Assembly (NCBI RefSeq): GCF_021028975.2
Contig: NC_059432.1
Span: forward strand, 64,852,001 to 64,916,000
Direction of reading: 5' to 3'
DNA: 64,000 bases
DNA from: Sphaerodactylus townsendi
Lineage: Eukaryota
A program made the position numbers and the translations under genes. This document shows positions 1,929 to 63,700 of the stretch, piece after piece. Below the pieces are notes generated by a model. That model was not told the DNA's origin and did not search any database. It saw only the letters and a program-made list of their open reading frames with translations. Position 1 is the stretch's first letter, and each line of letters begins with the position of its first letter.

Positions 1929-4900
1929 CCAAACTTGCGGATCAGCTTGGAGAGAAGGTTTCGCAGCTTCATGCGGAAGTGACGCCTCATGTCATCACTC
2001 ATGCCCCCGATCGCTTCTAGCTGTAAAGAGAACACTGGCATTAGAACTCTGGGCAGACGGCCATAAAGGTCCCCCCCTCCCCCAATCCACACACATCATA
2101 TCACTTAGGAAACAAGATTTGTCAGTCCAAGACCTCCTCCTCCCACTCCATCTCTCCCTCTGCTCCCATTGCTTTCTAAGAGCAGCAGAAGCAGCGCGGT
2201 GCCCTGTGGGCCTAAGGGCACTGTTACAGTTCCAACATGCACACAATAAAGTCTGTGCCAAATTCTAAATAGTTTTTTTGTGAGGCAGGGCTAGGATCAA
2301 TCAATGACAATGCTTTCTCCAACCCTTTTAAGAAAATTCAGATGCAGGCAAGCTGACCCTATTATCGTTCCCAGCACCCTCTTTCCCAATGCCTGCCCCC
2401 CAAATGCCACCCCTAACTCACCATGGTCTGCAGATGCCGTCCCAACAAAGCTACATCCAGGAGCAACAGCGCCACCTTGAGGAAGCCCAGGGCTGACTTG
2501 ACCACATCGCGTGTCCGAGAGCCTACCATGAGGCAGATATGCTGCACAAGCTGCTCTAAGGCAACTGGGCTGATGTGTTCTACAGGACAAAAGATCCACT
2601 TAGGAAAGGCACGCTCTGATTAATGTATTGTCGAAGGCTTTCACAGCCGGAATCACTGGGGTGCTGTGTGGTTTCCGGGCTGTATGGCCGTGTTCTAGCA
2701 GCATTCTCTCCTGACGTTTCGCCTGCATCTGTGGCTGGCATCTTCAGAGGATCTGAAGGTCAGTTCTGTTCATGAAGCTATTGGTCTTGTCCAGTCACTT
2801 TCTGGCACTCACGTTTCCTTACCTCATTCAGATCCTCTGAAGATGCCAGTCACAGATGCAGGCGAAACGTCAGGAGAGAATGCTGCTAGAACACGGCCAT
2901 ACAGCCCAGAAACCACACAATACCCCATGCTCTGATTCTTCAGATTCCCTCCCACACCCAGGTATGTAAGTGAGTTCTCTAGATTGCTACCTTACGTCAG
3001 AGAGTTGCCTTTCCCACAGGACCTCCCTTCGAGCATTAACAAACCAGCCCTGACCAAGCTGGAACTGAGGAGGCACAGGTTGGTGGGTACAGCTAGAGAC
3101 ATCTCCTTGCACACTCTGATGGAAGCACCCTTCTTTGCACAAATTCAGCTCAAGGATTCCTAACTGATCCCACCAGGAAGGTCAGTTCTGTTTATGAAGC
3201 TATTGGTCTTGTCCAGTCACTTTCTGGCACTCATATTCCCTCACCTTTGAACTCGAACAGCAGCCGAGCAAGAGCAAGAACAGTGCAGCTCATCATGTTA
3301 ACAGAGCCAGTCAAGCCTGCATAGACCAGGAGGAGGTACCGTTGCATTGCGTCTAAAGGAAATTGAAAAGCCAAGTGTTAGAGGATCCCCATCTTGTCTT
3401 GTCCTGGTTATGTTAAGAATAAGGCATATACAATCACATACAGCCTGTGACTAAGGCCTAAGCGGTTATTGCAGAAGATAGACAAGTATACAGAAATATC
3501 CATGGAGAGAGGAGAGTACATTCCCTGAATTCAGGTACCCTGGAGACAGTGAGAAGAACCACATCTCCAATCAATTTTTCTGGTGCATCAGAGGACAAAA
3601 GGGATGGCACAGAGATCCATTTCTGATAGGCCTCATGGGGAAGAGGACAGGAAACAGCTATAGGACCAATACAGCAATCTGAAAAGAGCAGCAAACCCTT
3701 TCTCTGAAAGCAAGAGGTTGGCTGGAATAAAAATTCAGCTCTCTGCAATATAAGAACAGCAAACAGGGTTCACAAAACTATGGCTAATGAGCAGAGTTAT
3801 TTTTTTATTGTTATTCTTTTAACTCCTTGCCTATTACATCAGTTATTATGACCTGTCTTCTGTCATAATTTAGGAGAAGGGAGGAGTATAGAATATGCAT
3901 TCTGAAAGCATTTACTGAAAGAAAAGAGAGCTCCATTTAAATATTTCTTGAGCAGAGTTATGTGTATTCTCTCCTTCAGCAAGTCTGCATGAAATATAGC
4001 ATCAAACGCCAGATGTAGATGCCTGAAGATTTTTTAAAAAATCACACTGCTTATAGTTGTTACCGTAATCTTGAATCCACGCAAGATGAATCCATGGCTG
4101 ACAAAATCTCAGAAGGTAAAAGGGGAGCCAAGTGGAATACTAGTGATCAGTTGGCTGGTTTAGGAAGTTGAATAGCTGACTCCTTCCCATTGTAACAGAA
4201 TTATATACAATAGAACGTGTGCTTTATTTGTTCAAATCTCACAACCCAGTAATCTAATGCAAAATGTGAACTGAACCTGCCCCCTACCAAATAATAGAAG
4301 CAAAGTTATGAAGCTCAGTCGGGTGGGGGGGTGGGGGGTGAACTATCAGGACAACTGCAGCACCATAGGTAGGAAAAAAGATCAGAATAGATAGGAGCTA
4401 GCAAGGATGTCGGTGATGGTGGGGAAACTAAAACCCTTTCTCCAATCCCAACATATTCATACAGCAATCCCAACATGGGTAACCAGGACTCACCATCTGC
4501 AGTAGGGCCAAAGCGCAGGAAGGCATGACCAATCTCTACAAGCAGACTGAAGGCATTCTTACGGGCACCCACAGATACCTCTTTGGTGCACAGTATCACC
4601 TACAGACAGCAAAGATATTCATCAGCGTCCTTGTATTGCTCTCAGCTAGGCCTAGAACAGGGGTAGGGAACCTGCTGCTCTCCAGATGTTCAGGAACTAC
4701 AATTCCCATCAGCCCCTACCAGCATGGCCAATTGGCCATGCTGACAGAGGCTGATGGGAATTGTAGTTCCTGAACATCTGGAGAGCCGCAGGTTCCCTAC
4801 CCCTGGCCTAGAAGTTTCCCCAGCACTGAGCATTTTAACAGTGCCCAAAACACCAAAACATAATGGGTACTCTCTTCCCACAAAACAGAAGATGAGAAAC

Positions 4901-38600: not shown

Positions 38601-40674
38601 ACTGGGCAGGCACTAGGACCACAGAGGTGCATTCAACTGCACAGAAGGTCTAGGAAATGGCTGCAGATTAATTCAGCATTGAGTTTCTATCTTTCATTGA
38701 GACAAGGTATAGCCTGTTTACTTCTTGGCTCATCAGTAACCAAGTTAAGAACAATTCTATTTTGTCCCGCAAGATCTGCCAGGATTACCTTGCATGTCAC
38801 TGTGGCTCCCACATCAGGTAGAAGTTGAGAATCTGCATCCCTCATTACACAGACCACTGGCAGCTGCGAAAAGCACAGAAAACTGGTATATCATCCCCTG
38901 GTTGCACTGAATCAGGCTGTCTGCTGGCACAATAAGCCAACTGCGTCTTTGATCTCCTCTGGATTTCCAGAAGATCACACACTGATTATTGTCTCACTGA
39001 CATCATCAAACCATGTAGCATATCCAACCCAACTGCTACCAATTTGCTTTATATTTACCATGCCATTCTCACTTTTCTTAATGAAACAACCTGCCAAAGA
39101 GGAAAATATAGAGCCATGACGGGTGTAGGTACCACTGCCAGGGGTTCCTTCCTCTAGGCTGCAGAGTCTCTCACCTGTGGAATACAATATAAAGGTGAAG
39201 TCAGTGCTAAGGCCCCAAGTCTGCCTGCCTGAGATAGCCTGTGTGCCCAGGCCCTTCCACATAGTACCTGGCAAAATGTTTTAATGTGTTAGAAAAATCA
39301 GCAGCAGCAGCATTGTGAAGTCTGGCCAATCCAGTGTTCCTCACCCAGTTTGTATGACTTCATAAACTAAGGCTACAATAAATGAAACAGGTAAAGATGG
39401 TGCCGTAGTGGAAGCAGGACCAGCCTGAGTATCTTAAACCTAGGAAGGGTACAGTGGAGTTAGTTGGTTGTTGTGGGTTTTCCGGGCTGTGTGGCCATGG
39501 TCTGACAGATCTTGTTCCTAACATTTCGCCTGCATCTGTGGCTGCCTTCTTCAGAGGTGTATCACAGAGGGAAGTCTGTTACACACTTGAGTTAGTGTAC
39601 ATGTTCAAATACATCAGAGGAAGATGTTTGTAAAGTGCCATTTCTCACACTCCAGACAAGGAAAGACTTCTCATTACTAAGAAAATGTCCAAAAGCATCT
39701 ATACTCCCTTAATTGATCTTTTGCTGATCTTCCTCCTCTGAGGTCTCAGGAGGGAAGAGGTAGAGGAAGAAGGATCACACCCACCATCTATGGGAGAAGC
39801 CAGAGCAGCTCCTGAACAAGATATCAAGTGATTTCATCAGGACTTCCAACAACTTTCACTCTACCAACTTGAGCAAGAATCATTCCATTCAATAGGTACA
39901 TTTTTTCTTTGCAATCCTTATACAACTATACAGATGACACATAAGCACTACTTTATATTGAAATTTCACTGTCTATCATGTGTGACTACATGTTTCTAAA
40001 AGAAAAAATAATCTGTTGTCTATAGCTAAGGACTGTATTACAATCCTATTCACTCCAACCATCAAACAGGAATTTGCACCACACATTCACGATACCTATT
40101 CAATAAAGTAAAGCAAAGCCAGACTGTTCCCAGAACTAGCCTACTATGCTACAGGCCCAAAGGAGAAATAATTGGCACAGCAATTATTGTCACCTACAGC
40201 TCACAACTTAAACCAGTCCAGGGCATCATCCTGGATAACAATATTCTCTCTCATAGGCCTTTGGGTGGCAGAGCTTTCCTTGCTGATTCAAAACAGCTTC
40301 TCATCAAGAACTACAGACTGTGTGACAGAAACTCAAATGTAGGAACCAAAACAAGCAGCAAACCTAGATGGCAGTTTTACCCCCACAAACATTCATGCAA
40401 TATCACAGCCATACTAATGAAGTTCAGAAACACGTGGTGGAACATATTACCTCCCAGGACATATTGTAGCCATTCTAAAGGTTACTGTTCTCCTTTAAAA
40501 TAATTTCACTGGAAGGATCTAAGGCCACAGTGATGAGCCATTCACAAATTCAAGGCAGTGTTCCTTCACACACAGTGAACAGGGAGCTTGAATGTCTCAT
40601 CTGCATAGCTCAACCTCCCCGCACCCCCCAGTCGCCATTCACCCACCAGGAACACAGTACCGCGCCGGGGCCAT
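35619..40674 (-). CDS. EXOSC1: Exosome component 1 (Csl4), 8 exons, 194 aa
   Basis: Exons 40647-40674, 39059-39174, 38789-38863, 37873-37961, 36998-37031, 36592-36642, 36401-36485, 35619-35725 (585 nt). Translation MAPARYCVPGERLCSLEEGTPGSGTYTRHG...SFRPGDIVLAKVISLGD...MVPISWCEMQCP...RKVARVQPQFLQT*. Confidence 0.97.
35778..36076 (-). mobile_element. Squam3-like SINE, EXOSC1 intron 7
   Basis: Reverse complement of the same SINE family. Confidence 0.85.
36486..36591 (-). other. U12-type (minor spliceosome) GT-AG intron, EXOSC1 intron 6
   Basis: Donor GTATCCTTTT; branch site TTCTTTAAC (36503-36511) ~18 nt from the acceptor AG; no strong polypyrimidine tract. Confidence 0.9.
37273..37571 (-). mobile_element. 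Squam3-like SINE, EXOSC1 intron 4
   Basis: (GAA)n tail on the + strand, followed by the family body and tRNA-like head. Confidence 0.88.
39465..39588 (-). mobile_element. Single Penelope-like pLTR fragment with a degenerate hammerhead, EXOSC1 intron 1
   Basis: Closely similar to the 63352-63604 arms; flanked by gagttagt (39457-39464 and 39589-39596). CTGAAGA core intact, but helix II and the GAAAC motif are mutated. Confidence 0.8.
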
Positions 40675-43030: not shown

Positions 43031-43174
43031 TAAACTGAGAACCTCAGATTCTCCCTTTAAATCCATGCCGAAGGGGGTGGATTTAAAAGGAGTATCTGGG
43101 GAAATTTTGGGGTGCCTGCTGTCAGGGGTGCAATTGTTAAGCTAGAATCACCAAACTTTCAGAGTATCTTTAGG

Positions 43175-43775
43175 AGTCTCTCCTAATGATACCACCCAGG
43201 TTTGGTGAAGTTTGGTTCAGGGGGTCCAAAGTTATGGACCCTCAAGGGTGTAGTCCCCATCTCCTATTAGCTCCCATTGGAAACAATGGGGGATGGGGGC
43301 ACCCCCTTTGGGAGTCCATAGCTTTGGACTCCCTGCACCAAACTTCACAAAACCTGGGTGGTATCAATAAGAGACTATCTTGATAGTACATCCCAGGTTT
43401 GGTGAAATTTGGTTCAGGTTGTCCCAAGTTATGGACCCTCAAAGATGTAGCCTTAATCTTCTATTAGCTCCCATTGAAAACAATGGAGGATGGGGCACTC
43501 CCTTTGGGAATCCATAGCTTTGGACCCCCTGGACCAAACTTCACAAAACCTGGGTGGTATTAATAAGAGACTCTCCTGATAATACACCCCAGGTTTGGTA
43601 AAGTTTGGTTCAGGGGGTCCAAAGTTATGGACCCTCAAAGGTGTAGCCCCCATCTTCTATTAGCTCCTATTGGAAACAATGGAGGATGGGGGCACCCCCT
43701 TTGGGAGTCCATAACTTTGGACCCCCTGAACCAAACCTTACCAAACCCAGGTAGTATCATCAGGAGAGTCCCCCA
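43175..43775. repeat. Three ~196-bp tandem units, each an imperfect palindrome
   Basis: cccaggtttgg recurs at 43195, 43392 and 43588; each unit has ~60-bp inverted arms (gataccacccaggtttggtgaagtttgg... / ...ccaaacttcacaaaacctgggtggtatc). Confidence 0.9.
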
Positions 43776-45341: not shown

Positions 45342-48300
45342 ATGAGGACCCGTCGGTGGATATTCTCTGCTGTAATGCGCCTCTTACTGAGGTGCCTGCG
45401 AATAGGTCAGCGCCACCGGTCCTGGCCAACCCAAAAGGTGCGGCAGCTATGGCTATATGGACGTCTGTGCCTGCGCTCTCTGCTGTACAACTCCTTCACT
45501 GACAGCGACACTGCCCTTGATGCTCTCTTTGAGCCTGTCTACTGGCTGGTGGATCACATCACCCGTTGGTTTGGAGTGGTGAGTACCCTTAGGAAGAAGA
45601 GTGGAGCCTAAAGTCCTCTCAAAGCAGTTTCAGCTCTGACCTTTGGAGATGTTGCCCTCAGCCGTTTTGAGTGACTTCTTCAAACACTAGCTGTTCTAGA
45701 CTATCAAGGTCAGCATTGTCTAACTGGCAGCAGTTCTCCAGGGTCTCAGACTGATGTTTTTCATAGCACCCATGACCTGGAGTCCCTTAACGGGAGATGC
45801 TTGGGATTGAATCTGTGACCTCCTGTATTCAAAGCAGATGTTTTCCCTCTGAGTTAAAACCCTCCCTGTCAAGCAAGGGCAGGGGTAGGGAACCTGCGGC
45901 TCTCCAGATGTTCAGGAACTACAATTCCCATCAGCCCCTACCAGCATGGCCAATTGGCCATGCTGACAGAGGCTGATGGGAATTGTAGTTCCTGAACATC
46001 TGGAGAGCCGCAGGTTCCCTACCCCTGAGCAAGGGGGAGATAACAGATGTGGGAATGGGATTGATTCACATAATCCTTTATCTGCTCCTCAGAATTGTTC
46101 TCTTGGAATTAACGGGGGGTCCATGCAGGCTTTATTGATTTTCCACTAGTACTGTGCTAGTGATCCAGTCCCTTCCCTGATCCTTCTAACAGGTGTTTGT
46201 TGCATTGGTCATCATTCTGACTGGCTCAGTGGTGTGCATTGTGTATTTCTGCCTCTTGCCACTCATTCTGCGGACTTACCCTCTTCCCTGGGTCTTCTGG
46301 CACGTCATCTATGGCCATTGGAACCTTGTCATGATCGTCTTCCACTACTACATGGCCATCACTACTCAGCCTGGTTGCCCACCACAGGTAGGTCAGAGGC
46401 CTCAGTATATATCCTTCTTTCAGCAGGGGGTGCAGGAGTTTGATTCTTCCGGGTTGTTGTGGTTTTTTTTAGGCTGGTATTTGAAGCAAATCTCCTTGGT
46501 AGGATTCCCCATCATTTCATGCCAACAGCAAAAGGCAAAGGCTATCCTGGAGCTGCCCTTGCGTGGAACTCCGGAAGGCCCATATTTAAGTGTTTTTGAT
46601 GCCAGCTTGTTCTGAGTTAGCATTTGGTGGCAGCATTCTTGCAAGAGAAGGGTAAGAGCCCCTCTTGTTTCCTTCCTGTAGCAGCCAAAGAGCGACATCG
46701 CTGCTGTCTCCATCTGCAGAAAATGTATTGCCCCGAAGCCTGCCAGGACCCACCACTGCAGCATCTGCAACAGGTGGGTGTTCTCCCTATGTCAGAACAA
46801 GGTTACCCTCGTGCTTTTCACTTCCGTAGTGTGTTGTGATTTTTGTGCTTGGGCATAAATTATCGTCTAACAACTGGTAAAAATATATTTCAAAGAAATA
46901 CATGCAGACCTTAAATCCCTTGCAAAATGCAGCTGCTGGCTTTAAAAGAAGGACATTAAAAACAGATATGAAAACCAACTGAACATATAAGCTAGATTTG
47001 AACCATGGATATGAACAAATGGACCTGCAATGGCTCCTCAAAGCCTCAAGGTAGAGGTTTCTTCCAGCAAGAGTACCTGAGATTCTTTTATATGGAGAAA
47101 GCTTGGGACAAATTCTGTACTACTGAGCCTCTCCCAGGAGAATCTTAAGGTTGCATCTCTTAGTTCTCCATTTGGGGTTCTTGAATAACATCCATTAGCA
47201 TGCTGATAGCTAGGCTGGTTTGTCTTGTGCAATTGTATCTGCATGTTTTTTAAAATCTGTTGTAGAATTATGTGTTCGATATACATTGCTGAGGATTTTT
47301 AAAAACCTTTTGGTTTGCATGTTCTCCACTGTCTTATACTTCAGTTTTCCCCCAATAATTTGCATCAGAATAAAACATCTCAATGAGAGCAACATATTCC
47401 CTTTAGTCAATATACTCTGCTTAATTGTGGCCACAGAGTTGAGTTTCCTCCAATACAGAACTGAAAACTATTTTTATGAATACTTCAGAATTAAAGTAGG
47501 GTAGACACATTTAATGGATTGTCCGTGCACTTTGTGATCTCTGTAAGAATGTGACTAGGCAATGTGTCACATTGCAGTTACAGATCCATCTGACCCCCCA
47601 CCCCCCCCTTTGATTGTTAGCATCAGTTAATATGGTTGGATCCATTGTCCCTATTCTCTGAGCTGAAGAGTGTTTCTACTTATGCCAGAGAGAGGATAAT
47701 TTTTGCTACTTCTCCCCTTTCCACTACAATGTCACATTTCAAAGGCTATTTATGCACTTGCGTTCTGCCTTACAGCCAGCTTACCTTTCCTTCTCTATAG
47801 ACTTTCCTTCATTCATTATTTTTGCCTTTTCTGAAGTCACCACAGGGTAGAGCAGAGAAGCTGTGCAGTTTCCAAATGCTGGCAAAATGCAGTCTTTCCT
47901 GTTTCACTTTTCTCCATGAAGCGAAACAGCTAAACAGGAAGTATTATTCTTTATCTGGATTTTGTTGCTTCTTCCTGCCTTTCCCAGCTCACCCAACAGC
48001 AGTGCTTCCAGTTCTTGAAGCCATTGTTCCTGAACGATCAGAAGAGCCTCATTTTTTTTAATGCTGCAGGTCTGACATTGGAGCAAGAGACTGGTCTATT
48101 GAATTATCGGATCCCAGGGGGGAAAAGGGGGTGGGTTTTTGCAGGAAAACCACAAGGCATGCAGGATTAAAACTTTTGTCTTTGTTGGACTGGCAAAAGT
48201 ACTTTAGATAAGAATAAAAGAATTCTTTTAAAATTCAGTAGTGTAGGCAAAAGGGCTCTGCTAAAGTGGTACTTTTATTGTGTATATATGTATCTGTGTG

Positions 48301-60700: not shown

Positions 60701-63700
60701 GAAGACAAAAATGGAAGAGCTTGAAAGAAAGAGCTTGTGCCAAACGCTCATTGCCAGAAGGAAAGAAAGCAACTCTTTCAAACGAGATCAAAATATAAAA
60801 GCTAAAAAACACAATTTATTGGGCTTCCCTATCACAGGAAAGAAACTAAAGCATAGGTCTTACATGATATGTTTTACCATGGCAAAACATAATATATGGC
60901 AACCAAAGTGGTCTGAAATTAGAGTGGTGAAGAGAAAGGGCTAACTAAGCAACACACACAGAAGCCAAATGTGCTACCTCTTTCCAGTGTAACTAATTCA
61001 TTTTATCATTTTAACTTTAAAAATGACAGAACAGTACAGCATCAGCTGTTAGGAATGAATCAATTCCAAGACAATTCTGAAAAGCTCAAACACCTGCCAT
61101 CCCCCCCGCCCTTCCCGACCACAGCACTGGGCCCAACTTTGCCCCTGCATTTCACCTGGTCTGGGAATCTTCCTCATGGAGAATGAATCGAGCCAGGCTG
61201 TCCACAAGTCTATCCACATCTGGGAAATCCAGGAGCCCTGCAACAGGAAAAATTGCATCTACATTTCTTCCCTTGCACAGGGAAGGGAACACAGCACTGC
61301 TTTTTCTGACTTGCTGTATTGTAGACCACTTCCTATAATCTGTCTAGTGCTCCTAAAGTCCAGCTAGCATGAAATAAACTGGAAAAAAAAACCAACTGTC
61401 TGAAATCCAATCACCTAGCTATATACATGTGGCAGACCATGCCAGACTGCACACTACAGGGATCTGCACACATGAGAAATCCAGAAACACACCAGAAGAG
61501 AAATCTTCTAGCAAAACATAATGTTTCCTGGGGGCATCACTCAACCCATACAGAGAGAAGGAGGAGAAGAAGAGTTTGGATTTATATCCCCCCTGTCACT
61601 CCTGTAAGGAGACTCAAAGGGGCTTACAAGCTCCCTTCCCTTCCCCACTCACAACAAACACCCTGTGAGGTGGGAGGGGCTGAGAGAGCTCCAAAGAACT
61701 GTGACTAGCCCAAGGTCACCCAGCTGGCATGTGTTGGAGTGCACAAGCTAATCTAGTTCACCAGATAAGCCTCCACAGCTCAAGTGGCAGAGCAGGGAAT
61801 CAAACCCGGTTCTCCAGATTAGAGTCACATACCTTGCAGTAATCCTAAGAAGGTCAACGCTCGGATCCCAACCAACTGTAGTTGCACGTTGGGCTCAACA
61901 AGTGCTGAGAACACCATGGAGCACAGAGCATCTTTGGAGCAAAGCAGGGGACTCTTGTCTGGAAGAGAAGGAGAGAGAAGCAGCTAGTGTTATTTTGCTT
62001 CAGAGCCTTGGGAACTAATGTTATGGTATAAATTACAAATCAACAGTGCAGATGTTAACAGGAAGCCAGCTCGCACCTTCTTCCTCAGGACCCCACTTCT
62101 GCCGCAGCTCCAAGAAACCAAGGAGCACCTCCAAGATTGTCCTACGCTGACTACTCTACAAGAGATCAAAAAGACACAGGCTGAATTAGGGGGGTCAAGA
62201 ACATGGAAGAAGAGGCATGATTCAAGGCTACTGTCCTATGTCGGCCACAAGCCAAAGCAAACTCCAAGGGCAGATGTAGAATAACCCACAACCAAACTTT
62301 CCCTAACCTGCAACTGGGGCTGCCAGTTCCATCACCATGATCCTCCACTCCAGCACTTACTTGCAAATGCTTGTTATACTGCTCCACCAGTAATGGAAAC
62401 ACATTGCTTGTGATCTGGTAATAAGCCCGCAAGGAACCCCCTGCAGCTGCCTGCAGGAGCTTTGCACTCGGCCACACCAACTTCATGTCTGGCTCACACA
62501 GGTGGTGCCTGCAATCTGAAGCAGGCAAGACTGCATATGAGTGAGATAACAGAAGCCCCAAAATCCCCATTAAAATCCCACCAAAAAGCAACTTTTCTCC
62601 AACAGGATGTTGCTCATCTTCAGAATTTTAAGGCTGAGCAGAGAATTTATTCTCTGTTCCTACTTCCCCAAGTTAACAGTAGGAACAGTTTCCACCCCTT
62701 TCTCTAAAGCTGGACAGCAGATGCCTTCTTCTCCTAAAAGGGTGTAATTTCCTCCCAATAGAATTGTGTGAATGGAGTCTCTTCTTCAAGTGGCTGCCCA
62801 GTCAGTATTAAGTATTTATATGCTGCTTCTGTCCTACCACCGCTCCAATGTCACCCAGCATGTTTTCATGGTCCAATGTCACCCAGCATGCTTTCATGGC
62901 AAAGCAAGAATTCAAACCTGGTCTCCCACATCCTAGTCCAAACCCGTAACCACTATGTCACACCATCTCTTGTTGAAAGGTACACTGCTCCTGTGGAGTT
63001 ACCCTTCAAAATGCCTCCAAGGAAGGAATCCAGAAGGTCCTCATCATCTGAGCTGAGCACTGAGCGCGACAGGCATGTTGACAGAGAACGCAAAGTGGAG
63101 AGACCCTCTGTTTCAATCCTCTCACTTGCTGTCTGGAACACCTGGTCCGAATGGGAGGGAAGGGAAGGAAGGAAGGAGAATCAACTCTCCATGCAAGAGT
63201 TTGCCCTGTTTATAAACTAGACAAGAATGGGACTCCAGAATGCAATCAGCATTCCAGGAAGTCCTCAGGAAACAACCTGTATTCCGCAAACAGGTCAAAG
63301 TGGCCCTTTGAGTACATTTCTAGACAAAGAGGGGGAACAAAGGCTACATATGCATTGTCGAAGGCTTTCTCGGACGGATTCAACTGGTTATGGTGGATTT
63401 TCTGGGCTGTGTGGCCGTGGTCTGGTAGATCTTGTTCCTAACATTTCGCCTGCATCTGTGGCTGGCATCTTTCAAGGTGTATCACAGTGTAACAGACTTC
63501 TCTCTGTGGTATACCTCTGAAGATGCCAGCCACAGATGCAGGCGAAACGTTAGGAACAAGATCTACCAGACCATGGCCTTACAGTCCGGAAAATCCATTA
63601 CAACCAAAGGCTACATATATTTTCCCAGGAAACAAAGCCCACCTCACCTCCCATACAAATTCATTTCTCTCACCTCTCTGCGCAAGGATGACCAGAGGCT

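What the first reader, a model, noticed from the sequence alone, without database searches (positions are those of the whole stretch)
2755..3246. Penelope fold-back insertion has captured the 5' end of its own host intron, stopping at the splice donor
Seen: the loop between the two inverted PLE arms (2755-2824) is a 65/70-identical copy of 3177-3246, which lies 422 bp away. That segment is the first ~68 nt of RRP12 intron 24 and ends 2 nt into exon 24 (AG|GT). The left junction shares a gaa microhomology with the PLE arm. Inference: polarity fits one continuous cDNA. Priming at the target (2621) copies the PLE RNA 3' end, the RT jumps onto RRP12 intron RNA and runs to the intron 5' end (where a spliced intron or lariat would stop), then copies back to make the inverted arm. 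This would be a fossil of cis capture of host intron RNA by a PLE reverse transcriptase.
Basis: partly seen in the sequence, partly recalled or inferred. Interest (0 to 1): 0.85.

Follow-up and report, generated by a model that had tools for sequence, protein, structure and literature searches.

The report
Penelope fold-back with flank-copied spacer
A young 307-base Penelope-type retrotransposon hairpin in an RRP12 intron really does carry a 60-70 base copy of nearby intron sequence in its centre. The copy is bounded on both sides by short matches to the transposon's own end, so its stop at the splice site is probably a by-product of sequence, not a trace of copied intron RNA.

Summary
Positions 2755-2824 copy 3177-3246 (65/70). 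The copy sits between 101-nt inverted Penelope arms (96%), flanked by a 9-bp target duplication, inside an RRP12 intron on the minus strand. A close relative (2.6% diverged) has the empty site, and the 70-mer is not a repeat family.

1. The arms end at ORF positions about +120 and +86. Family copies in four genomes pile up at the same two ends. These match the two internal reverse-transcription start sites and the both-strand priming shown in vitro for anole Poseidon (PMC11167929). Two converging cDNAs fit better than a copy-back.
2. Other genomic copies show that the element continues GAAGGT past the arm. The spacer starts at the only GAAGGT in 2 kb. It ends at the next ACCT(T), the reverse complement of that same end, which happens to be the AAG|GT splice donor.
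3. The copy overshoots the intron 5' end by 2 nt.

So microhomology explains both boundaries, and an RNA 5' end is not needed. The template was either the sense DNA strand (favoured) or nascent pre-mRNA. They have the same sequence and cannot be told apart at this locus. The scan has noted nearby-derived spacers in two other fold-backs of this genome.

The parts
2613..2621 (.). Left copy of the 9-bp target-site duplication GCTCTGATT. The nick lies after ATT.
   Evidence: Sequence. A single copy is present in the empty site of organism D (record 25).
2622..2760 (-). Left arm: the 5' part of a Poseidon/PAc-type PLE ORF region, antisense on the + strand. It includes the 'tail' 2622-2656, which the right arm lacks. 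Its last 6 nt (2755-2760, GAAGGT) are shared with the copied source.
   Evidence: Family loose ends lie at 2622/2624 (outer) and 2760 (inner, followed by AGTAAAGC...).
2713..2747 (-). Minimal hammerhead motif (CUGAAGA ... GAAAC GUC) of the left arm. [quoted passage not shown]
   Evidence: Regex scan. The layout matches the PAc description. No Rfam hammerhead model hit.
2755..2824 (+). Spacer: a direct copy of 3177-3246 (65/70). Only 2761-2820 is unambiguously source-derived. 2755-2760 and 2821-2824 are also PLE sequence, so they are microhomology.
2824..2826 (.). Three extra bases (TCA, equally readable as CAT) between ACC(T) and the right arm. They are not explained by the source or by the PLE consensus.
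2827..2928 (+). Right arm: the same PLE region in sense orientation. Its outer end is at ORF about +85/86, so it has no tail.
   Evidence: The family has a recurrent end at 2927 and at the mirror position 2657.
2837..2871 (+). Minimal hammerhead motif of the right arm.
2929..2937 (.). Right copy of the TSD GCTCTGATT.
3177..3246 (-). Source of the spacer: RRP12 intron nt +1 to +68 plus the last 2 exon nt. It starts at the only GAAGGT in 2000-4000 outside the insertion and ends at ACCTT (3243-3247), which is the AAG|GT donor.
   Evidence: It is ancestral and single-copy in organism D.
3245..3352 (-). RRP12 exon encoding the equivalent of human residues 898-932. The donor is at 3245|3244.
   Evidence: Orthologous contigs L001-L003 align over it.
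2422..2579 (-). Next RRP12 exon. Its acceptor is at 2580/2579, 42 nt from the insertion site.

Best explanation
A Poseidon/PAc-type Penelope-like element nicked both strands of the RRP12 intron 9 bp apart, with the top-strand nick after ATT. Both 3' ends primed reverse transcription of the element's RNA at its two known internal start sites, about +120 on the left and about +86 on the right. This produced two converging antisense cDNAs of roughly 100-140 nt, each carrying the hammerhead region.

The two cDNAs have the same sequence, so they cannot simply anneal to each other. The left cDNA ended in ...GAAGGT. That end paired with the only ACCTTC on the sense (minus) strand of the right flank, 250 nt away. 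It was extended for about 64 nt until the new strand carried ACCT(T), the complement of the AAGGT end of the right cDNA. The new strand then switched onto the right cDNA and completed the fold-back.

On this reading the spacer is a microhomology-bounded templated filler. It ends at the splice donor because AAG|GT is the complement of ACCTT. The template was most likely the sense DNA strand, exposed by resection of the break. Nascent pre-mRNA has the same sequence and is the main alternative.

Shown: the anatomy, the TSD and empty site, the family end points, and the microhomologies. Inferred: the order of events, the polymerase and the template type.
For: - Direct repeat, arms and uniqueness.
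- TSD, plus the empty site in organism D at 2.6% divergence. The insertion is present in organisms A and B.
- Family-wide outer ends at 2622/2624 and at 2657/2927, with A/T-rich DNA outside them. These match two RT start sites 30-40 nt apart, nicking and extension of both strands, and an ATT cleavage motif in anole PAc (PMC11167929).
- The second fold-back (63352-63606) has the same tail asymmetry, and its right arm has 16 nt that are absent from its left arm.
- A PLE subfamily follows the focal left arm to 2760 and then reads AGTAAAGC (121 contigs in X1; 72 in X7, the genome that lacks this insertion).
- GAAGGT occurs in 2000-4000 only at 2755 and 3177. The first ACCT after 3182 is at 3243.
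- The source is local and in direct orientation. Other scan notes report nearby-derived spacers in two more fold-backs of this genome (untested leads).
- Organism D has G at 3235, as the loop does, so the copy went from source to loop.
Against: - Junction B is not clean. Three extra bases (2824-2826) separate ACC(T) from the right arm, so the right microhomology needs an extra small insertion or a variant template.
- The PLE consensus beyond 2757 comes only from loose-end consensus lines at 0.65-0.68 agreement. I could not fetch an actual copy.
- A 64-70 nt filler templated 250-320 nt from the break lies outside the usual polymerase-theta range of 3-30 bp within about 15 bp (PMC7165422). A more processive polymerase, possibly the PLE RT itself, has to be assumed.
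- Nothing in the sequence separates sense DNA from sense RNA as template.
- Four of the five loop/source mismatches cluster in the last 13 nt (P about 0.005). This is not fully explained.
Confidence: 0.5

Rival explanations
1. Same double-primed insertion and the same microhomology-guided switches, but the roughly 64 nt were reverse-transcribed by the PLE RT from nascent, unspliced RRP12 pre-mRNA held at the locus, for example by a polymerase stalled at the nick. This would be cis capture of host RNA, though not defined by an RNA 5' end.
For: The polarity fits. The extended left cDNA is the + strand and the gene is on the minus strand. The length and the distance from the break are untypical of polymerase-theta fillers. 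An RT is on site and already extending that very 3' end. A follow-up note in this genome reports a spliced IRF6 mRNA piece inside a PLE (not tested here).
Against: There is no RNA-specific mark. The copy is unspliced and includes the exon-intron boundary. The sense DNA strand has the same sequence and is always present, while this intron's RNA is short-lived. The locality of the source is what DNA templating predicts directly.
Confidence: 0.22
2. A single cDNA primed at 2621 jumps onto excised or lariat intron RNA, runs off at the intron 5' end, and then copies back on itself to make the right arm.
For: The spacer ends within 2 nt of the 5' splice site, and the polarity is right. The insertion lies about 42 nt from the 3' splice site, near where a lariat branch would tether the intron 5' end.
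Against: The copy includes AG of the exon, which an excised intron lacks. The terminal ACCT equals the PLE's own next bases (chance about 1/256 under run-off). The right arm stops at the family's recurrent +86 start site rather than copying the tail. The second fold-back's right arm holds sequence absent from its left arm. The first 77 nt of the intron form no special structure (z = 0.69).
Confidence: 0.06
3. The element first inserted as a spacer-less palindrome, as many family copies are. Later the palindrome centre broke, because long inverted repeats are fragile. The break was repaired by microhomology-mediated synthesis from the flank, which added the spacer after integration.
For: Many genomic copies join the arms directly (joints 2750>2834 and 2756>2828, 11 contigs each in X1). 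The broken centre would expose the same GAAGGT ends, so the same microhomologies apply.
Against: It needs two events where one suffices. Loop/source divergence in the clean 57 nt (1 mismatch) is not lower than arm/arm divergence (4/101), so there is no sign that the spacer is younger. Organism B was not resolved at the centre.
Confidence: 0.1

Closest known systems
Penelope/Poseidon-clade PLE insertions with an inverted 5'-truncated copy and a 30-40 bp 'tail' (Evgen'ev & Arkhipova 2005; Craig et al. 2021, PMC8557442; PAc of Anolis, Frangieh et al. 2024, PMC11167929)
   Same: Hammerhead at the pLTR-ORF junction, with the ORF ATG at stem II and the cut site 26 nt after it. Inverted arrangement. 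One end is about 34 nt longer (the tail). ATT at the nick. Both strands are apparently primed.
   Different: Only about 100-140 nt per arm, with no RT/EN ORF. It carries a 60-70 nt host-derived spacer at the centre, which I did not find described in the papers read here.
Templated insertions at double-strand-break junctions (polymerase theta TMEJ, PMC7165422; MMBIR-type template switching, PMC8421209 by abstract)
   Same: A direct copy of flanking sequence, bounded by microhomologies of 6 and 4-5 nt to the two 3' ends. The logic is aborted synthesis followed by re-annealing.
   Different: It is much longer (64-70 vs 3-30 bp) and templated much further from the ends (250-320 nt vs about 15 nt). 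The joined ends are retrotransposon cDNAs, and the polymerase may be the element's RT.
LINE-1 5'-junction phenomena: twin priming inversions, microhomology-mediated 5' end attachment, and chimeric U6/L1 or mRNA/L1 retrocopies by RT template switching (from my own knowledge: Ostertag & Kazazian 2001; Zingler et al. 2005; Buzdin et al. 2002; Gilbert et al. 2005)
   Same: Second-strand priming gives inverted segments. Junctions use microhomology. Host sequence can be added at the far end of the cDNA.
   Different: In twin priming the two segments are different parts of the RNA, whereas here they are the same part. Captured RNAs in L1 chimeras come in trans and carry RNA marks, whereas here the source lies 250 nt away in cis and is unspliced.

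Membership tests
Penelope-like element, Penelope/Poseidon clade (PAc-like) | Minimal type-I hammerhead core (CUGANGA, stem II, GAAA, short palindromic helix III, GUC) at the pLTR-ORF junction | tested here: met
   A regex finds intact motifs at 2837-2871 (+) and 2713-2747 (-). The architecture is as in PMC4209133. Rfam's curated hammerhead models give no hit, so this rests on the motif and not on a covariance score.
Penelope-like element, Penelope/Poseidon clade (PAc-like) | ORF start at stem II and HHR cut site 26 nt after the start codon | tested here: met
   The ATG lies in CTGAAGATGCC and GUC ends at +29, as described.
Penelope-like element, Penelope/Poseidon clade (PAc-like) | Two alternative outer ends 30-40 nt apart (the 'tail'), reflecting internal RT initiation | tested here: met
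   The left arm ends at about +120 and the right arm at about +86. Family loose ends pile up at 2622/2624 and 2657/2927 in four runs. The second fold-back shows the same.
Penelope-like element, Penelope/Poseidon clade (PAc-like) | ORF with telomerase-like RT and C-terminal GIY-YIG endonuclease | not tested
   This copy holds only the first 28-40 codons. No full-length copy was looked for in the window.
Penelope-like element, Penelope/Poseidon clade (PAc-like) | Real insertion: TSD and empty orthologous site | tested here: met
   9-bp TSD. The organism D contig joins 2612 to 2929.
Polymerase-theta templated insertion (TMEJ scar) | Insertion identical to flanking DNA, with microhomology at the junctions | tested here: met
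   65/70 identity to 3177-3246. GAAGGT at the left junction. ACCT at the right junction, with 3 extra nt.
Polymerase-theta templated insertion (TMEJ scar) | Length 3-30 bp and template within about 15 bp of the break | tested here: not met
   60-70 nt, templated 250-320 nt from the right TSD.
RT capture of host RNA (template switching or run-off at an RNA 5' end) | An RNA-only mark: a splice junction, poly(A), or an end exactly at a known RNA terminus | tested here: not met
   The copy is unspliced. It runs 2 nt past intron +1 into the exon, and those terminal bases are also PLE sequence.
RT capture of host RNA (template switching or run-off at an RNA 5' end) | Polarity: the extended cDNA strand is antisense to the transcript | tested here: met
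   The spacer is on the + strand next to the left cDNA, and the gene is on the minus strand. The sense DNA strand satisfies this equally.
LINE-type twin priming | The two inverted segments derive from different, adjoining parts of one RNA | tested here: not met
   Both arms cover the same PLE interval.

The most novel reading that the evidence does not exclude
The PLE reverse transcriptase, while extending the left target-primed cDNA, switched through 6 nt of homology onto nascent RRP12 pre-mRNA tethered at the nicked locus and copied about 64 nt of intron before switching onto the second cDNA. That would make this a fossil of cis capture of host intron RNA during PLE integration.
Probability: 0.22. 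Interest if true: 0.6.

Novelty: new member of a known kind. Interest (0 to 1): 0.35.

Why it matters
How Penelope-like elements finish integration is largely unknown, and so is how their typical inverted structures arise. This copy is young, has an empty site in a close relative, and carries a locally templated spacer at its centre. That shows the centre of the fold-back was built at the target site, from two 3' ends carrying the same PLE sequence. It agrees in vivo with the in vitro finding that both strands are primed at two internal start sites.

It also serves as a caution. An endpoint at a splice site looked like an RNA signature, but the donor consensus AAG|GT is simply complementary to this element's cDNA end. 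If spacers of this kind are common, as two other notes in this genome suggest, a survey of them could show which polymerase and which template resolve PLE intermediates.

Tried and rejected
- **Rfam.** A scan of 2000-4000 and of the right arm alone found no hammerhead model. It returned only a hairpin-driven MIR530 hit below threshold and noise. The HHR call therefore rests on the motif.
- **Orthologues through protein fragments.** The exon-25 peptide found ORF fragments and contigs L001-L005. These are only about 80% identical in the exons and their introns do not align. They show intron 24 is about 290-380 nt elsewhere, but they give no empty site. The empty site came from Logan contigs instead.
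- **More copies of the PLE subfamily.** The PLE N-terminal peptide search found nothing. Two metagenome scans found nothing. There was no further copy in the window or in the fetched loci.
- **A small structured RNA, such as a tailed mirtron, as template.** The first 77 nt of the intron fold no better than shuffles (z = 0.69).
- **'The 70-mer is a repeat.'** Rejected.
- **Lariat read-through across the branch.** The bases after AC do not match sequence upstream of any plausible branch point without several gaps. Rejected by eye.
- **The 8-mer CTTCAGAT next to the right TSD (2938-2945), which is also in the PLE.** By my estimate about 0.16 such matches are expected by chance. I treat it as chance.
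- **Mosaic at the loop end.** Loop bases 2816 and 2820 agree with the PLE sense sequence when aligned on ACC. This is suggestive of a heteroduplex but not significant (P about 0.06). I keep it as a note only.
- **Spliced model.** Exons were searched one by one, by reference.

Full report
**1. What is there**

Positions 2755-2824 and 3177-3246 are a direct repeat of 70 nt with 65 identities. Positions 2657-2757 and 2827-2927 are inverted arms of 101 nt, 96% complementary, 69 nt apart. Neither the loop nor the source has a third copy in the 64-kb window.

The left arm runs outward to 2622, about 34 nt further than the right arm, which ends at 2928. The whole 307-nt unit is flanked by GCTCTGATT at 2613-2621 and 2929-2937.

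**2. Gene context**

On the minus strand, 3245-3352 is an exon. Its 35 full codons match human RRP12 residues 898-932 (E 2.7e-8). It ends ...AAAG|GTGAGG, with the donor at 3245|3244.

The next exon is 2422-2579, and its 52-residue peptide finds RRP12 fragments and a 1297-residue RRP12. The intron is therefore 2580-3244, 665 nt long, or about 349 nt without the insertion. The insertion sits 42 nt upstream of the acceptor.

**3. It is a real, young insertion**

I laid Logan contigs of four runs on 2300-3500 (runs).

- **Organism D.** One 2070-nt contig covers 2300-2612 and continues directly at 2929-3497. That is an empty site with one TSD copy. It has 23 differences in 882 nt (2.6%).
- **Organisms A and B.** Both have contigs crossing both outer junctions (2300-2644/2646 and 2900/2901-3223).
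- **Depth.** Depth on the arms is 1e6-1e7, against about 20-110 on the flanks. The source region is a single contig in D. So the arms belong to a very large repeat family and the 70-mer does not.
- **Direction of copying.** D has G at 3235, as the loop has at 2813. So at least one of the five mismatches arose in the source after copying, and the direction was source to loop.

No listed contig spans the loop itself. Its independent support is only the 0.91 share of sampled words in run X1.

**4. What the arms are**

Each arm carries CTGAAGA...GAAAC-GTC, a minimal hammerhead as described for PLEs (PMC4209133). The layout reported for the anole Poseidon element PAc is reproduced exactly. The ORF starts at stem II and the cut site lies 26 nt after the start codon (PMC11167929). 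Rfam's curated hammerhead models do not score it.

That paper also shows the following in vitro:
- PAc nicks and extends both target strands.
- It prefers an ATT site.
- It starts reverse transcription at two adjacent internal sites, and the spacing between them is the 30-40 nt 'tail'.

Here the left arm starts at ORF about +120, right after ATT of the TSD, and the right arm starts at about +86. Across four genomes, other family copies break away from the focal sequence at 2622/2624 and at 2657 or its mirror 2927, with A/T-rich DNA outside.

The second fold-back in the window (63352-63606, TSD AAAGGCTACATAT) has the same asymmetry. Its right arm contains 16 nt of PLE sequence that its left arm lacks, so that arm cannot be a copy of the other.

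I conclude that the fold-back is best read as two converging target-primed cDNAs. A single cDNA that copied back on itself fits less well. This is an inference from end points, supported by the in vitro work.

**5. Why the spacer starts and stops where it does**

Most family copies leave the focal left arm at 2750. A subfamily follows it to 2760 and then reads AGTAAAGCAAG... This subfamily is 121 contigs in X1 and 72 in X7, the genome that lacks this insertion. So the antisense PLE sequence is ...CAGAGGATCTGAAGGT|AGTAAAGC.

- **Left boundary.** The six bases GAAGGT (2755-2760) are shared with the source (3177-3182). In 2000-4000 this hexamer occurs only at those two places.
- **Right boundary.** The sense PLE sequence upstream of the right arm is therefore ...ACCTTCAGATCC. 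The spacer ends ...ACCT. In the source this is ACCTT at 3243-3247, the first ACCT after the start point. On the gene strand it is the donor AAG|GT.

Both boundaries of the copy are thus matches to the same PLE cDNA end, once in each orientation. The unambiguous copy is only 2761-2820 (intron +3 to +62). The stop at the splice donor follows from the donor consensus being complementary to ACCTT.

Under a run-off at an intron 5' end, the two exon bases and the identity of ACCT with the PLE's next bases would both be coincidence, with a chance of roughly 1/256.

The weak point is junction B. Three extra bases (2824-2826) separate ACC(T) from the right arm.

**6. Mechanism proposed**

Two identical antisense cDNAs cannot anneal end to end. 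The left cDNA's GAAGGT end paired with ACCTTC on a sense-strand template 250 nt into the right flank. It was extended by about 64 nt, then re-paired through ACCT(T) with the AAGGT end of the right cDNA and copied it.

The sense template could be either of two things:
- the minus DNA strand, exposed as the 3' tail when the right end is resected;
- nascent RRP12 pre-mRNA.

They have the same sequence, so this locus cannot decide between them. I favour DNA (about 0.5, against 0.22 for pre-mRNA) for three reasons. The flank is always present. Locality is its direct prediction. Two other notes in this genome describe fold-back spacers copied from nearby sites, one of them a patchwork of three sites (untested).

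Against a plain polymerase-theta event, such fillers are 3-30 bp and templated within about 15 bp (PMC7165422). A more processive enzyme, possibly the PLE RT, must be assumed.

A later break of a spacer-less palindrome is a further possibility (0.1). Many family copies do join their arms directly.

**7. Residual oddities**

Four of the five loop/source mismatches lie in the last 13 nt (P about 0.005).
- One is the source's own change (3235).
- Two (2816, 2820) agree with the PLE sense sequence when aligned on ACC. This would fit repair of an imperfect heteroduplex at the second switch, but it is not significant on its own.

Loop/source divergence (7%) is slightly above the A-D divergence (2.6%; Fisher P = 0.048). 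The arms differ by 4%.

**8. Comparison and verdict**

The element is a member of the Penelope/Poseidon PLEs on every structural feature I could test. The RT/EN ORF is absent from this fragment.

The spacer works like a microhomology-bounded templated insertion, but it is too long and too distant to be filed as a typical polymerase-theta scar. It lacks every RNA-only mark that would file it as RNA capture.

The striking part of the interpretation, a lariat-defined stop plus copy-back, is not supported. Interest is moderate. It is a clean in vivo fossil of how PLE fold-backs are closed, and it points to a feasible genome-wide test.

Noticed in passing
window 63352-63606: A second PLE fold-back from a subfamily about 80% like the focal one, with a 13-bp TSD AAAGGCTACATAT. 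It has the same tail asymmetry (left arm about 37 nt longer at the outer end) and no spacer. The right arm extends 16 nt further inward than the left arm, and the hammerhead motif is intact only in the right arm.
   Followed up: partly
window 39466-39600: A solo, non-inverted fragment of the same PLE region. It continues inward as ...CAGAGGTGTATCACAGAGGGAAGTCTGTTACAC, which shows what the other subfamily looks like beyond the arm.
   Followed up: partly
window 2816-2824 (minus strand): The spacer places a second, consensus-improved donor-like site (AG|GTAAGG, against AG|GTGAGG at the real donor) in sense orientation inside the intron, about 240 nt upstream of the acceptor. The insertion lies 42 nt from the acceptor, and a CTAAG branch-point candidate near 2600 remains between them.
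   Followed up: no
window 2657-2927: The RRP12 pre-mRNA of carriers must contain a 101-bp, 96% paired hairpin with opposed hammerhead motifs. It could be a substrate for dsRNA editing or processing. No RNA run holding the stretch was on record.
   Followed up: no
window 2812-2825 vs 3234-3247: Four of the five loop/source mismatches cluster in the last 13 nt (P about 0.005). Two of them match the PLE sense sequence, so this may be a mosaic from heteroduplex repair at the second template switch.
   Followed up: partly
window 4652-4811 and 45880-46027: Two zero-spacer palindromes (arms of 80 and 74 nt, 93-96% complementary) belonging to another repeat family without a hammerhead motif.
   Followed up: no
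window 43148-43770: A cluster of overlapping inverted and direct repeats (units of about 120 nt, 71-86%) from a further, non-PLE repeat family.
   Followed up: no
Read laying joints on window 2693-2898: Hundreds of other genomic fold-backs of this PLE family join their arms at varied points. Recurrent spacer-less joints are 2750>2834 and 2756>2828. Some carry fillers of 1-8 nt. One has a 28-nt patchwork of PLE pieces, which suggests repeated template switching at these centres.
   Followed up: no
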